From NCBI GenBank assembly GCA_002269645.1, contig NIVC01001322.1, forward strand, positions 124,001-188,000: a DNA stretch of 64,000 nt. The letters run 5' to 3'. Shown in pieces: positions 17,717-37,625 of the stretch. Below the pieces are notes generated by a model. It was not told the DNA's origin and did not search any database. It saw only the letters and a program-made list of their open reading frames with translations. Positions within the stretch are counted from its first letter, which is position 1; each line of letters starts with the position of its first letter. The position numbers and the translations under genes are program-made. The DNA comes from Macrostomum lignano. Its lineage: Eukaryota.

Positions 17717-18000
17717 TGTTAAAGCGGATGACTGGTCAGAACAAAAGAATAAGGAAAAAAGTCGGATTCTTAAAAGTATTTTTCTTGCCTTCAGCACTTC
17801 TGCGGTCTCGCGCAGACACACAAAACAACTTACCAAACTTACCAGAAAATCGCGCCTTTTAATTATTATTTAACGTGGGGTGGGGTTAACAAAGAGGGGG
17901 CTTAGCTCATGTGCCTTAAATACATTTTAAAATAAAGATTACTGTTACTGTTAAGTCAGTAAAACCCCAAAAGTATAACAAAAACTGAACCTCCAGAACA
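17717..18000 (-). repeat. BEL/Pao 3' LTR (284 bp)
   Basis: TG...CA termini; homologous to 37341-37625; preceded on the - strand by the purine tract AGGAAAGAGAGAA (18001-18013). Confidence 0.9.
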
Positions 18001-18274
18001 TTCTCTCTTTCCTGATTGGGGCCAATCAGCAAAAAAGCAGGAAAAAAAGCCTCCCCGAAACTTACGTACAATTAATAAAAAGGTGCAACTGTAAAATTGA
18101 AACGGTTGCAAGCATATTTTGGAAAAAAACAGTAAACTCCTGTAAACAAAAAATAAATAGCGCGAAAGCAGAAAGTAACAATACGAATGCATGCAATGCG
18201 AAGTGTCGATTGGGCTAAAAAATAGGAAAATATACGAGAATAGTCCATTTTAACAATAAGTCAACAGCCACTGT

Positions 18275-19920
18275 TCACCTCGCTGCAGCAGGCACAACTT
18301 CGTCACGAGCCGTTACGTCCAGGAAATACCTCGAGAACTCGCCCGAGCGGCCAGTGTCCTCGAGGCGCATCCGCTTGTAGCGCCAAGACGATGTCGCCGA
18401 CGGCGAGATCCGGCTGCTCCTTGACCCAGTCGGATCTGGCGTTGAGTTTAGGCACCCACTCTCGCAGCCATCGGTGCCAGAAGTGCCGCACCAGCTCTTG
18501 GACGCGCCGCCACCGCCGGCGCGGTTCGTGGCGGGCCTCGGTCGAGACTTCCATAGCAAAGTCACCACCCAGCTAGCCATGCAAGAAATTGTTTGGCGTC
18601 AACGGCGTGTCGTCCTGTGTGGGCTTGCGGTTTGGTACGTCAACGGCCTGGAATTGATGAGCGCTTCCGCACCTGTGAAGGCGGAATGCAGCTCTTTGTC
18701 GGTGATGTCAGCGTTGCTGAGGATGGCGCGCACAGCTCGCCTAGCGGCGCGAACCATAACTTCATGGGCGCCGCCGAAATGGGGCGCCGACGGAGGCTGG
18801 AAGTGCCACTTGATGCCGCGCTCAGCGGGCCGCTCTCTGGATTTTGTTCTGCTGCTCGTTTTCGAATTCTCGTAGTTCTCGCTCGCCTTTGACAAAGTCG
18901 CCGCCGTTGTCCGAGTAAACTTCGAGTGGCCGGCCTCTACGGGGCCGGTTGATCATGCGCGCGAAAGCATTCAGAAACGAGTCGGAATCCAAGCTGTATG
19001 CCATTTCAAGGTGCACGGCTCTCGTCTCCAAACAGGTAAACAAAGCAAAATACCACTTCGTTCGCCGTCTTCCGCGCCTTTTTTCCGTTTCAAACGGACT
19101 ACTGAAGTCGACTGCCACAAAGCTGAACGCTCGGAGCGAGTTCTTCAGCCTGGCCTCTGGTAGTGGCGCCATCTGCTGCATCTCCGGTCCTGCTTTCTGC
19201 CTTCTGCACCGCGCGCACTCCCTCTTCCATTCTCGAATGGCTTCGCGCCCACCGATCATCCAAAACTTCGTCGACATCCCTGCCAGAGTTTTTTCCGCCA
19301 TGTCCTTGATCTCTTCGTGATAGTGCTTCAATAACAACTTCATGACCCAAGTTCGCCTCGGCAGAATGACCGCGGATGCTTGGACTGATATGACAGATTC
19401 TGGTCGAACTTCAGTCTTCCGTCCACTCGCAGCAGTCCTTCCTTATCAAGAAATGGTTGGAGACAGCGGAGCTGACTGCTAGAGGAGACCGGCCTTCCAT
19501 TACGCACCTGCTGAACTTCTGCTTTGAAAGCTTCTTCCTGAGCCACACGTAGGATTCGATCCTCAGCTTCTTGCAGCTCCTCGACCCAAGGACCACTAGT
19601 CCTAGCAGTCATTGCCTCAAGCTCGTCGGTAGTCGGCAGTTACTAATGAACCGCTGAACCCAAGCAGTCACGCTACGTAGCCTTCGGTAGCTCCAAAATC
19701 GCTCTGAATTCAAACGCCAGTCGTAGTCTTGACTGTGGTATCGTTCGAAAATAGAGTTACGGCCGCCGATTTTCTACTCTTGCTCGCCTCTCGCCGAACT
19801 TCTTGAACTCCGTCAACCGATTTCGGAACTAGCCTTGCCGGCCAGCCATTCTCATCTAGCAGCGGAAACTCTGGTCCCGCGCTCCAGACTGCTGATTGGC
19901 AAAGGTCTTTGGCACCGTCA
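18275..19920 (-). pseudogene. pol: BEL/Pao pol 3' part: end of RNase H plus integrase and DUF5641-like tail, multiply frameshifted
   Basis: WSAGPEFPLLDENGWP, RFWSYRRLRSVTAWVQRF, LDKEGLLRVDGRL, HYHEEI...[64 protein letters not shown] are BEL-specific motifs. Confidence 0.92.
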
Positions 19921-20630
19921 GCAGCAGCACCTCCTGCACCGGTAGCGGGCAGCAGGAGTCGGCACGGATAATGTGGCCTGCCAGCTGAAGACGCCGATGG
20001 CGCAACAGTTCGCGGAGACGGGACAGGCCCGTGCGGCAATAAAATTCCGCATTGGGGACGTGCTCGCAGCTGAACTTGAAGGCGGCGCGCAGCAGGCCAG
20101 CGTGCGCCGCATCGATCTGCTGTTCGAGCAATTCCGTCAGCGTCCAGGTCTCCACGTTGTATAACAGGACGGTTTCGATCACCGCTTGGAACAGCGCCGC
20201 CTTCTGGCGGTCAGGCACGGCAGTCAAACTGCTGCAGAGTTGCCTATAAAAGTGTCGCACATTCCACCGCCTTTGCTTGCAACCCACAAAAGTTGCGAGC
20301 GTGCAGGGTTGGCTTGCGGAAGCGTTTGTTGGCTGACACCATGTCCTGCCTCTCCAGGAAGTCCTTCAGCGCTCCGGTATTGCCATTCTTGCCCGGTGTC
20401 ACCAATAGCGATCGACCGCTCAGGTCGATGCAAAGCAGCGTACAGTTTTCCCAGGGCGACCACTGTGTCACGCTGCGCCGTTGCCTCTACCTGCGCCGAG
20501 AGCTGCACGAAGAAGACTTTGAGCCTCCTCCGGTCGGGTGGCAGGAGGCGCGTACACGCAGAACAAGCGCGAAGCCAGACGTCGACCAGCTGGGGGAACT
20601 GAAGCAACGCATAGTTTTGAGGTAGTAACG
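19920..20630 (-). mobile_element. RTE-like LINE remnant: endonuclease fragment joined directly to the post-RT C-terminus
   Basis: Endonuclease-like VFFVQLSAQVEATAQRDTVVALG and LKDFLERQDMVSANKRFRKP. C-terminal KAALFQAVIETVLLYNVETWTLT...RHRRLQLAGHIIR. Confidence 0.75.
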
Positions 20631-21237
20631 TGAAGTGGGGCTGCTCGACCGTACAGAAGATAGAAACAAGGACTACTAGTCTACATATATTCGTGTGGTC
20701 CTTGGATAGATGTTGACTTGGATCATCTAAAACTCATAACCCTTAGATTCGGTTAGTTCGATTTAGATTGGAATTTAACGGGCCACATGCAGTTCCGAGC
20801 ACAAACTATCAGCTGAGTGAGGGCTCCTAAGCCCTATTTCAGGAGATCGTACTGTAGAGTTTTTCAACTTTCACGCTCACTAAAGCATTTTTTCTCCTTT
20901 TTCCCCTCCTCTTCAGGGACCCATCGCTGCCATTGGTTTTTTAGCCCAATTATAGTATGGGGTATTACTCTTCTAAAATTAGCATTTGATTAATTGCTAT
21001 TCGTATCAGATTATGCATATTGTTTTGTGGTTAATAAAATATGTACTAGCAGCAGCAGCAAGTGCACTAACTTGTAGTAAGCCAGTGGACAGTTGACCGG
21101 AGTTGGTGTGGGTCTGAGTGGGGGAGCATGTTGGGACCAGACTGACCGAATCAACTTGCCGAGAGAGAGGAAGGGCAGGATCCTGCCTAGACTTAGTATG
21201 GATCTTTGTTCATCCACTCGTGGCGTGAGTCAGACTA

Positions 21238-37315: not shown

Positions 37316-37320
37316 TTTTG

Positions 37321-37338
37321 AACCACGCTCTGCTACCA
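37321..37338 (-). other. BEL primer-binding site, tRNA-iMet type
   Basis: TGGTAGCAGAGCGTGGTT, 2 nt after the 5' LTR end; resembles the complement of an initiator-Met tRNA 3' end. Confidence 0.8.
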
Positions 37339-37340
37339 GT

Positions 37341-37625
37341 TGTTAAAGCGTTAAAGCGGATAACTGTTCAGAACAAAAGAATAAGGAAAAAAGTCGGATT
37401 CTTAAAAGTATTTTTCTTGCCTTCAGCACTTCTGCCGGTCTCGCGCAGACACAAAAAAACTTACCAAACTTACCAGAAAATCGCACCTTTTAATTATTAT
37501 TTAAAATTTGGTGGGGTTAACAGAGAGAGGGGGTTGGCTCATTTACATTAAATAAAGAAAAAATACATCTACAGTTAAATAAGTAAAACCCCAAAAATAT
37601 AACAAAAAACTGAACCTCCAGAACA
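37341..37625 (-). repeat. BEL/Pao 5' LTR (285 bp)
   Basis: TG...CA termini; homologous to 17717-18000; followed on the + strand by TGGTG and the resumed 29-bp array. Confidence 0.9.

What the first reader, a model, noticed from the sequence alone, without database searches (positions are those of the whole stretch)
17717..37625. BEL/Pao retrotransposon shell enclosing a 15.6-kb cargo with three WSC lectin-like genes
Seen directly: a 29-bp array is split in register by a 19.9-kb unit bounded by homologous LTRs with TGGTC/TGGTG flanks. Inside are PBS-gag at one end and RNaseH-tail/integrase/PPT at the other, while protease and RT are absent. Their place (about 19920-35550) is taken by three intron-containing secreted double-WSC genes plus other TE debris. 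The genes are antisense to the element, so their introns would survive in an element transcript. Inference: either LTR-mediated capture/transduction of a host gene cluster, which is rarely described for animal BEL elements, or a later insertion or recombination into a resident element.
Basis: partly seen in the sequence, partly recalled or inferred. Interest (0 to 1): 0.82.

Follow-up and report, generated by a model that had tools for sequence, protein, structure and literature searches.

The report
Dead BEL retrotransposon holding WSC genes
An old, broken BEL/Pao retrotransposon in the flatworm Macrostomum lignano has had its enzyme genes replaced by about 15.8 kb of ordinary host DNA carrying three WSC lectin-like genes, most likely copied in at the DNA level from a nearby gene cluster and not carried in by the element.

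Summary
The window is M. lignano contig NIVC01001322.1:124001-188000. A minus-strand BEL/Pao element (17717-37625) splits a 29-bp minisatellite in register, with flanks TGGTC/TGGTG. It keeps both LTRs, the PBS, gag, the post-RNase H linker, integrase and the PPT. Nothing matches the gag zinc-knuckle region, protease or RNase H. A cargo at about 19895-35655 takes their place.

Corrections: in this copy g1 and g2 are pseudogenes and only g3 is intact. Little or no RNase H survives.

A second copy of the whole composite, with the same flanks and the same junctions and about 5% diverged, lies on NIVC01000084.1, so it is not a misassembly. It is a duplicated locus and not a transposed copy.

BEL-free copies of the g1-Tc1-g2 unit lie about 86 and 135 kb upstream of each composite, inverted. 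One of them also carries the 159 bp that abut gag, and its homology stops exactly at the cargo/gag junction.

Neither cargo end looks like a mobile-element terminus. The left end is a 3'-truncated LINE relic, and there are no terminal inverted repeats.

Best reading (about 0.6): a local DNA-level duplicative insertion into a resident element, soon after it integrated. Retro-transduction is about 0.1. Interest is modest.

The parts
16631..17716 (.). Left part of the 29-bp minisatellite (target site). Its last 5 nt, TGGTC (17712-17716), are the left TSD copy.
   Evidence: TRF; sequence. The same TGGTC|TGTTAAAG junction is present in the second copy (L003).
17717..18000 (-). 3' LTR of the BEL/Pao element (284 bp, TG..CA).
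   Evidence: p=0.096 against the other LTR.
18001..18012 (-). Polypurine tract, GGAAAGAGAGAA on the minus strand, abutting the 3' LTR.
   Evidence: Sequence.
18296..19895 (-). pol 3' remnant: post-RNase H linker (W-x-GPEF motif at 19886-19866), integrase zinc-binding and core regions, and the C-terminal region. It has at least 5 frameshifts and in-frame stops. One frameshift, between 19836 and 19728, is shared with the second copy.
   Evidence: Pfam Integrase_H2C2 and weak rve; tblastn with BEL proteins; reading frames; gap-free alignment of 19627-20296 to L003.
19877..20587 (-). LINE relic at the left end of the cargo: endonuclease-domain pieces and the region C-terminal to RT. It is internally deleted and truncated at its 3' end by the junction with BEL (about 19890-19900).
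   Evidence: 1609 homologues. Long ones carry Exo_endo_phos and RVT_1, with the match lying after RVT_1. tblastn map.
20587..29890 (+). Unit U: g1, a Tc1 relic and g2. This is the part of the cargo that also exists as BEL-free copies elsewhere (FA = L006/L007/L009; FB = L005).
22313..23950 (+). g1, a double-WSC gene with 3 exons. It is a pseudogene here through a 2-bp deletion near 23851 in exon 3.
   Evidence: Pfam WSC.
24100..25618 (-). Degenerate Tc1/mariner transposase relic (DDE_3), with no recognisable TIRs. It is shared by the copies compared over this stretch (B and FA in full, FB in part).
25618..27471 (+). Unclassified segment. It looks RT-like by eye, but Pfam and PDB sequence searches give nothing. 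It is present in this copy and in free copy FB, and absent (same breakpoints) from copy B and free copy FA.
28574..29671 (+). g2, a double-WSC gene. It is a pseudogene here through a 1-bp deletion near 29041 and AAG>TAG at 29251. It is intact in the other copies (P0007, P0279, P0280).
32777..34127 (+). g3, an intact double-WSC gene of 219 aa with a signal-peptide-like N-terminus, two phase-1 introns and two WSC domains. It is identical to PAA69447.1. It was found only inside the two shell copies.
35190..35486 (.). 48-bp tandem array: 6 copies here, and a far longer run (about 1.2-1.3 kb) in copy B.
35497..35655 (+). Terminal 159 bp of the cargo. The same segment lies 1.55 kb downstream of g2 in free copy FB, and homology there ends exactly at 35655|35656.
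35656..37315 (-). gag remnant (DUF1759). The ORF is open up to the junction, and its stop TGA is the first cargo triplet. The 3 frameshifts here (about 37074, 36621, 36047) are all specific to this copy.
37319..37338 (-). Primer-binding site, TGGTAGCAGAGCGTGGTTCA, 2 nt from the 5' LTR.
   Evidence: Sequence.
37341..37625 (-). 5' LTR, with a 9-bp tandem duplication at its inner end in this copy.
37626..37805 (.). Right part of the 29-bp minisatellite. The first 5 nt, TGGTG, are the right TSD copy.

Best explanation
Proposed sequence of events:
1. A BEL/Pao LTR retrotransposon integrated once, on the minus strand, into a 29-bp minisatellite between an ankyrin-repeat (ASPP-like) gene and a Kv channel gene. 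This made a 5-bp target-site duplication.
2. Soon afterwards, and before the duplication that gave M. lignano its two copies of this locus, the core of the resident element was lost. The lost part is the zinc-knuckle end of gag, protease, RT and RNase H.
3. A patchwork of ordinary genomic DNA replaced it, joined at both ends by non-homologous DNA joining (break repair or replication template switching).
4. The patchwork includes a copy of a WSC-gene unit (g1, Tc1 relic, g2) whose BEL-free copies sit 86-135 kb away on the same chromosome in inverted orientation. It also includes a block carrying g3.

On this reading the LTR shell is incidental and the composite never moved as a unit. Since then the locus has behaved as ordinary duplicated DNA. 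It exchanges sequence with its paralogues, takes up further insertions, and in this copy has lost g1 and g2, while g3 stays intact.

Shown: one integration; shared junctions; free copies nearby; one breakpoint mapped against a free copy; no mobile-element termini at the cargo ends.
Inferred: donor-to-shell direction; DNA-level mechanism; timing.
For: - One integration: the array is in register with a TSD, and the second copy has the same left junction.
- Real and old: NIVC01000084.1 is collinear across both flanks, both LTRs and both shell/cargo junctions. Divergence is a uniform ~5% in flanks, shell and cargo.
- Nearby BEL-free copies: L005 lies 86 kb from copy B. L007 (= L006/L009) lies about 135 kb from the window composite. 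Both are inverted, and neither has gag or integrase of this family.
- Mapped breakpoint: free copy L005 carries window 35497-35655 downstream of g2, then continues with non-BEL sequence exactly where gag starts in the shell.
- Left cargo end: a LINE relic cut inside ORF2, so it lacks its 3' end.
- No terminal inverted repeats at the cargo ends.
- The cargo keeps introns, promoter-side DNA and old TE relics.
- g1 against g2 (p=0.19-0.27) is older than the LTR pair (p=0.10-0.13), so the cluster was not built in place.
- The element-sense strand of the cargo has 24 AATAAA/ATTAAA hexamers, against 0 in the shell.
- Proximity: a retrotransposed composite would land near its donor only with a chance of about 5e-4. 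This is my estimate: 250 kb out of a genome of several hundred Mb (size from my own knowledge, not from a tool).
Against: - Short interval: gag had no frameshift or stop at the time the two copies split. All lesions are copy-specific. LTR-pair divergence is about equal to between-copy LTR divergence. So the replacement must have happened within a short time after integration, which a composite arriving ready-made would explain without effort.
- All cis elements for retrotransposition are retained.
- g3 and the LINE relic are not in the free copies sampled, so the cargo is not one simple block copy.
- Divergences among the four unit copies are mosaic. Gene conversion blurs both direction and dating.
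- The region upstream of free copy FB could not be fetched, so the left breakpoint is not mapped against a donor.
- Only about 190 kb of the genome outside the window was examined.
Confidence: 0.6

Rival explanations
1. Retro-mobilisation. A chimeric, non-autonomous BEL derivative (LARD-like, or formed like an oncogene-transducing retrovirus) already carried the WSC block between gag and integrase. It was reverse-transcribed and integrated as one unit of about 17-20 kb into the 29-bp array. The antisense orientation of the genes protected their introns.
For: - LTRs, PBS, PPT and the 5' region/gag are all kept.
- There is a TSD around the whole composite.
- The gag ORF was still intact when the locus duplicated, and the LTR pair is barely older than that split. 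This leaves little time for a later event.
- The genes are antisense to the element.
- LARDs and 30-kb flatworm LTR elements (Burro) show that size alone is not prohibitive (PMC6431247).
Against: - The only other copy of the composite shares its flanks.
- The other WSC unit copies lack any BEL part.
- Donor-type copies lie within 86-135 kb on the same contig, which random integration would give with a chance of about 5e-4 (my estimate).
- The free copy shows no BEL at the mapped breakpoint.
- There are 24 poly(A) hexamers on the element-sense strand of the cargo.
- The cargo is a patchwork that includes a 3'-truncated LINE relic.
Confidence: 0.1
2. Stepwise build-up inside the element. Ordinary nested TE insertions, a small gene insertion, local tandem duplication and deletions gradually filled a resident BEL. 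The free copies were later copied out of the shell.
For: - The region is an active sink for insertions and deletions. Copy B has a 16-kb and a 3.2-kb extra segment, a 675-bp insert in gag and a 1.2-kb integrase deletion.
- Unit copies B, FA and FB are closer to each other (1.3-3.8%) than any is to the window copy. This could mean the free copies derive from copy B.
Against: - g1/g2 and g3 paralogue divergence (0.19-0.29) exceeds LTR divergence.
- Copying out of the shell would need a breakpoint that falls by chance exactly on the cargo/gag junction.
- The free copies occupy parallel positions on both duplicated contigs. That points to an origin before the split.
Confidence: 0.15
3. Artefact, or two independent elements: a chimeric assembly, or two separately truncated BEL copies that happen to flank a resident WSC cluster.
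For: The genome is extremely repeat-rich and polyploid. The assembly contains redundant contigs (L006 and L007 are 99.7% identical).
Against: - Both junctions sit inside single alignments to an independently assembled, 5%-diverged copy.
- There is a single TSD in an in-register array.
- The two halves are complementary and in the same orientation.
Confidence: 0.02

Closest known systems
Intrachromosomal segmental (duplicative) insertion by non-homologous repair or template switching, landing in a transposon
   Same: Donor-type and acceptor copies lie on the same contig about 100 kb apart and inverted. Introns, intergenic DNA and old TE relics are all copied. The junctions have no TSD, TIR or poly(A) tail. 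The insert is a patchwork and is accompanied by a deletion at the target.
   Different: The target is the interior of one LTR element whose cis-acting ends survive, which mimics a cargo-carrying retroelement. Direction and mechanism are inferred and were not observed.
Large retrotransposon derivatives (LARDs) and other non-autonomous LTR elements with foreign internal DNA (reviewed in PMC6431247)
   Same: LTRs, PBS and PPT enclose an interior that is mostly unrelated to retroelement genes. Partial gag is retained.
   Different: LARD families are multicopy with different flanks. Here the only second copy has the same flanks. The interior is a recognisable host gene cluster that also exists BEL-free nearby.
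Host-gene transduction by retroviruses, and gene-fragment capture by LTR retrotransposons (for example maize Bs1; from my own knowledge)
   Same: Host sequence replaces pol between gag and the 3' part of the element.
   Different: Known captures are typically short, in sense orientation and spliced. This is about 15.8 kb of unspliced, antisense, multi-gene DNA that itself contains TE relics.
Macrostomum lignano prostate-specific / seminal-fluid candidate transcripts with two WSC domains (PMC4490696, PMC5977470 Table S1, PMC6953679)
   Same: Small proteins of about 220 aa with a signal-peptide-like N-terminus and two WSC domains. Their best hits outside flatworms are fungal WSC proteins, as reported for those transcripts.
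   Different: I could not link these particular genes (Mlig012890, Mlig008306, Mlig020751, Mlig005381, Mlig024181) to the published transcript names. Their expression site is untested.

Membership tests
BEL/Pao LTR retrotransposon (Belpaoviridae) | Paired LTRs with TG..CA ends and a 4-6 bp target-site duplication | tested here: met
   LTRs of 284 and 285 bp, p=0.096. Flanks TGGTC/TGGTG (one mismatch) in an in-register 29-bp array.
BEL/Pao LTR retrotransposon (Belpaoviridae) | PBS next to the 5' LTR and PPT next to the 3' LTR | tested here: met
   The PBS begins TGG 2 nt from the LTR (37319-37338). The PPT is GGAAAGAGAGAA (18001-18012). The tRNA it matches was not identified; the window has no tRNA gene.
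BEL/Pao LTR retrotransposon (Belpaoviridae) | gag with the DUF1759 domain | tested here: met
   PF03564, E=1e-8. It is 50-59% identical to DUF1759 proteins of other invertebrates.
BEL/Pao LTR retrotransposon (Belpaoviridae) | pol with protease, RT and RNase H | tested here: not met
   Queries covering RNase H (P0018 residues 1-185) or the knuckle/protease region (P0060 residues 444-678) match nothing in the window. No RVT_1 was found in the ORFs scanned. I had no BEL RT query. This is therefore a deleted, non-autonomous copy.
BEL/Pao LTR retrotransposon (Belpaoviridae) | Integrase (H2C2 zinc-binding region, rve core, BEL-type C-terminus) | tested here: met
   PF17921 is above its cut-off and rve is weak. 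Homologues carry PF17921, PF00665 and PF18701, with tblastn matches from 19603 to 18296. The reading frame is broken at least 5 times.
Mobile non-autonomous LTR derivative (LARD-like) or transducing element | Several copies of the same LTR-interior junctions at different genomic sites, each with its own TSD | tested here: not met
   The only other composite has the same flanks and the same left junction. Three further loci with the WSC unit have no BEL parts. The sampling is limited to loci reachable through annotated WSC proteins; no whole-genome DNA search was possible.
Mobile non-autonomous LTR derivative (LARD-like) or transducing element | A full-length element-sense transcript that can be packaged and reverse-transcribed | not testable with these tools
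   Indirect only: there are 14 AATAAA and 10 ATTAAA hexamers on the element-sense strand of the cargo, against none in the shell.
DNA-level intrachromosomal segmental duplication | A donor-type copy on the same chromosome that extends beyond the breakpoint | tested here: met
   Free copies lie 86 kb and about 135 kb away, inverted. L005 runs through the right breakpoint into non-BEL sequence. The left breakpoint was not mapped.
DNA-level intrachromosomal segmental duplication | Junctions without transposon termini, TSD or poly(A) tail | tested here: met
   There are no TIRs. The LINE relic is cut inside ORF2. gag is joined directly to the cargo, with the ORF stop as the first cargo triplet.
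WSC-domain secreted proteins | WSC domains above the Pfam cut-off | tested here: met
   Two WSC stretches in each of P0282 (96 bits), P0007 and P0281. The hydrophobic N-terminus was judged by eye only. Carbohydrate binding and secretion were not tested.

The most novel reading that the evidence does not exclude
The composite is a BEL-derived, non-autonomous retroelement that picked up a multi-gene, intron-containing cluster of putative seminal-fluid WSC lectins in antisense orientation. It then retrotransposed as a unit of about 17-20 kb. This would be a retroelement route for relocating a whole animal gene cluster with its introns and promoters intact.
Probability: 0.1. Interest if true: 0.8.

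Novelty: new member of a known kind. Interest (0 to 1): 0.33.

Why it matters
If the DNA-level reading holds, the finding is a warning for annotation. An LTR-PBS-gag...integrase-PPT-LTR shell around host genes can arise without any transduction, so such structures should not be scored as gene capture without multicopy evidence.

It also documents how a family of small double-WSC genes grows and decays in M. lignano. The family includes published prostate/seminal-fluid candidates. At least four copies of a unit of about 9 kb exist on two duplicated chromosome regions. Their similarity patterns are mosaic, which suggests gene conversion. Two genes are lost in one copy. One gene (g3) is found only inside the retrotransposon shell.

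If the retro-mobilisation reading were true instead, it would be the first animal BEL element shown to move a multi-gene cluster.

Tried and rejected
I used ORFs and X-masked pieces instead.
- I looked for full-length members of the same BEL family to fix the breakpoints. The protein search gave only 44-66% identical relatives from other phyla and none from Macrostomum. The left breakpoint is therefore known only to about 10 nt.
- Exact-protein look-ups of window ORFs (integrase ORF, Kv channel) found nothing. The window was identified only through cluster members.
- L002 (NIVC01000040.1) as the parent locus: rejected. It is only about 70% identical and has no BEL.
- A large DNA transposon as the carrier: no TIRs at the cargo ends. 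The Tc1 relic has no TIRs either.
- LINE-mediated insertion or 5' transduction: rejected, because the LINE relic lacks its 3' end at the junction.
- Building the cluster in place by tandem duplication: rejected, because paralogue divergence exceeds LTR divergence and free copies exist.
- Dating the cargo from free-versus-shell divergence: abandoned. The four unit copies show conflicting site and indel patterns.
- The RT-like piece at about 26.7-27.5 kb could not be classified (Pfam, PDB sequences). It is also present in free copy FB, so it is not the shell's own RT.
- A tRNA search to identify the PBS partner found no tRNA gene in the window.
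Full report
**Where the window comes from.** My spliced model of the third WSC gene is identical to GenBank PAA69447.1 of Macrostomum lignano. The locus fetched for that protein, NIVC01001322.1:146777-168127 of assembly GCA_002269645.1, is 100% identical to window 22777-44127. The window is therefore NIVC01001322.1:124001-188000.

**The shell.**
- Direct repeats of about 284 bp lie at 17717-18000 and 37341-37625. They have TG..CA ends and differ at 26 of 270 aligned sites.
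- They sit inside one 29-bp minisatellite (16631-17715 and 37625-37805).
- Left flank ...GATATGGTC and right flank TGGTGTTGGG... restore the repeat unit exactly if the element and one 5-bp copy are removed. This is one integration with a TSD of TGGTC/TGGTG.
- The element is on the minus strand. The PBS TGGTAGCAGAGCGTGGTTCA (37319-37338) lies 2 nt from the 5' LTR. gag runs from the ATG at 37315 and matches DUF1759.
- The integrase zinc-binding domain is above the Pfam cut-off and the core is weak. The PPT GGAAAGAGAGAA (18001-18012) abuts the 3' LTR.
- The protein search returned only BEL/Pao-type proteins (PF03564, PF17921, PF18701, PF05380) from other invertebrates, at 44-66% identity.
- Used as tblastn queries, these proteins match 36619 down to about 35700 and 19910 down to 18296. 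Query parts covering RNase H, the zinc knuckles and protease match nothing in the window. I had no query covering a BEL RT.
- BEL homology on the integrase side resumes at the W-x-GPEF linker motif (19886-19866), so essentially no RNase H is left.

**The cargo (about 19895-35655), left to right.**
- A LINE relic on the minus strand (19877-20587). The library holds 1609 homologues. The long ones carry Exo_endo_phos and RVT_1, and the match lies just after RVT_1. The relic therefore lacks the end of ORF2 and its 3' tail at the junction.
- A (GA)n run (21238-21352).
- g1 (22313-23950).
- A Tc1/mariner relic (24100-25618; DDE_3).
- An unclassified 1.85-kb segment.
- g2 (28574-29671).
- A dispersed repeat (30203-31102, also present in L002).
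- g3 (32777-34127).
- A 48-bp array (35190-35486).
- A final 159 bp (35497-35655).

**The three genes.** Each has a short signal-peptide-like first exon and two WSC-domain exons separated by phase-1 introns. Pfam finds two WSC domains in the annotated proteins. In this copy g1 has a 2-bp deletion in exon 3. g2 has a 1-bp deletion and a stop codon. g3 is intact. No terminal inverted repeats bound the cargo.

**A second copy of the whole structure.**
- NIVC01000084.1 (loci L003, L004, L001) is collinear with the window through the left flank, the array, the LTR, the integrase remnant, the LINE relic, g1, Tc1, g2, g3, the 48-bp array, gag, the LTR, the array and the Kv-channel flank.
- The left junction TGGTC|TGTTAAAG is the same.
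- Both shell/cargo junctions lie inside single alignments (19627-20296 and 35190-36237).
- Substitution divergence is a uniform 3-6% in flanks, shell and cargo.
- The junctions are therefore real, and the composite predates the duplication that produced the two copies. This copy is a duplicated locus and not a transposition product.
- Copy B has since gained a 16-kb non-coding segment, a 3.2-kb gypsy-like fragment and a 675-bp insert in gag. It has lost 1.2 kb of integrase and the end of one LTR.

**BEL-free copies nearby.**
- The 90%-identity clusters of the WSC proteins contain further M. lignano members. Their loci show the unit g1-Tc1-g2 (window 20587-29890) without any gag, integrase or LTR of this family.
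- FB (L005) is NIVC01000084.1:16597-37710, 86 kb upstream of copy B.
- FA is L006/L009 on NIVC01004494.1. It is 99.7% identical to L007, which is NIVC01001322.1:1-13798, about 135 kb upstream of the window composite.
- Both free copies are inverted relative to the cargo.
- FB also carries window 35497-35655, 1.55 kb downstream of g2. The three-way alignment shows homology ending at ...GATCGCTCA. After that point the shell copies continue with gag, while FB continues with unrelated sequence.
- The gag reading frame is open right up to that point, and its stop codon TGA is the first cargo triplet.
- This fixes the right junction at 35655|35656. It also argues that a free-type locus was the source. 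Copying out of the shell would need a breakpoint that falls by chance on the junction.
- g3 and the LINE relic are not in the free copies sampled, so the cargo is a patchwork and not one simple block.

**Timing.**
- The LTR pair differs by p=0.096 here and 0.129 in copy B. The same LTR compared between copies differs by 0.074-0.124.
- Every frameshift in gag coincides with an indel that separates the two copies: three here, at least five in copy B. None is shared. The gag ORF was therefore intact when the locus duplicated, and integration preceded that duplication by a short interval only.
- One frameshift in the pol linker (between 19836 and 19728) is shared.
- g1 against g2 (p=0.19-0.27) and g3 against either (0.26-0.29) are older than the LTR pair. 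The cluster was therefore not built inside the element.
- Within the unit, copies B, FA and FB are 1.3-3.8% apart, and the window copy is 4.6-8.3% from each. Site and indel patterns conflict. I read this as gene conversion among paralogues, which rules out dating the transfer from these distances.

**Weighing the mechanisms.**
- For retro-mobilisation: all cis elements are retained, the TSD encloses the composite, the post-integration interval is short, and the genes are antisense. Non-autonomous LTR derivatives with foreign interiors and 30-kb flatworm LTR elements are known (PMC6431247).
- Against it:
  - No composite with different flanks was seen.
  - Donor-type copies lie within about 100 kb on the same contig. 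Random integration would give this with a chance of roughly 5e-4 (my estimate).
  - The free copy has no BEL at the mapped breakpoint.
  - The cargo is raw genomic DNA with a 3'-truncated LINE relic at one end.
  - The element-sense strand of the cargo has 24 poly(A) hexamers, against none in the shell.
- I therefore favour a local, DNA-level duplicative insertion that replaced the core of a resident element (about 0.6). Retro-mobilisation is about 0.1, stepwise build-up with copying out of the shell about 0.15, and artefact about 0.02.

**What the genes are.**
- The nearest relatives outside Macrostomum are fungal and metagenomic WSC proteins at about 30% identity.
- Published M. lignano work describes prostate-specific and seminal-fluid candidate transcripts with two WSC domains and the same kind of best hits.
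- Between the two copies, g3 has dN=0.071 and dS=0.053 (35 non-synonymous against 7 synonymous changes), with all cysteines kept. This fits fast evolution but does not prove selection.
- Membership of these particular genes in the seminal-fluid set is an inference.

**Limits.** There was no whole-genome DNA search of M. lignano. Other loci were reachable only through annotated WSC proteins. The left breakpoint is known to about 10 nt and is not mapped against a donor. No outgroup species was available.

Noticed in passing
window 42969-51960: An apparently intact, young Ty3/gypsy element. Its 874-bp LTRs (42969-43842 and 51088-51960) are 99.8% identical. The gag (44262-45272), protease-region (45338-45943) and 1227-aa pol (45985-49668; RVT_1, RNase H, integrase) ORFs are all open. 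Its sense strand has no AATAAA.
   Followed up: partly
window 1760-10807 and elsewhere: A 21-bp minisatellite of about 440 copies (9 kb, 60% GC, strong AT skew), plus many other arrays: 23/46-bp at 11361-12273, 28-bp at 12610-13046, 23-bp at 14388-14699, 33-bp at 40538-41575, 23-bp at 52980-54279 and 30/90-bp at 55038-56547. The last lies inside a 2841-aa open reading frame (54285-62810, minus strand).
   Followed up: no
window 20587-29890 against L001/L003/L004, L005, L006/L009: The four copies of the g1-Tc1-g2 unit have mosaic relationships. Parsimony sites in g2 favour grouping by contig (14, against 5 and 2). The 25618-27471 presence/absence groups the window with FB, and B with FA. The window copy is the outlier in distance. 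This suggests gene conversion among paralogues 86-135 kb apart.
   Followed up: partly
window 32777-34127 (g3) against L001 9290-10645: The exons differ more by amino-acid-changing than by silent changes (dN/dS about 1.3), and all cysteines are conserved. The copy-B gene has an extra T in exon 2, which explains its N-terminally shortened annotation (P0001). g3 was found only inside the two BEL shells.
   Followed up: partly
window 35190-35486 against L001 about 11257-12603: The 48-bp array next to the gag junction has 6 copies here and a run of roughly 1.2-1.3 kb in the other copy. Free copy FB has no such array next to the shared 159-bp segment.
   Followed up: no
L003 10791 to L004 3118 (NIVC01000084.1 about 129.9-145.8 kb): A 16-kb non-coding, minisatellite-rich segment lies between g1 and the Tc1 relic in copy B only. 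It is absent from the window and from FA. Its origin is unknown.
   Followed up: partly
window 37341-37358: A 9-bp tandem duplication (TGTTAAAGC/GTTAAAGCG) at the inner end of the 5' LTR. It is absent from the other three LTR copies.
   Followed up: no
L006 2-769 (NIVC01004494.1): A further WSC gene (about 74% identical to g1/g2 at the DNA level) lies 9 kb upstream of g1 in free copy FA. A LINE fragment of the same family as the cargo's relic lies between them, in the opposite orientation.
   Followed up: no
window 15598-15978: Another LINE fragment (41% identical to P0129 residues 684-786) lies in the left flank. A similar piece is in L002 (16603-16987, 87% identical).
   Followed up: no
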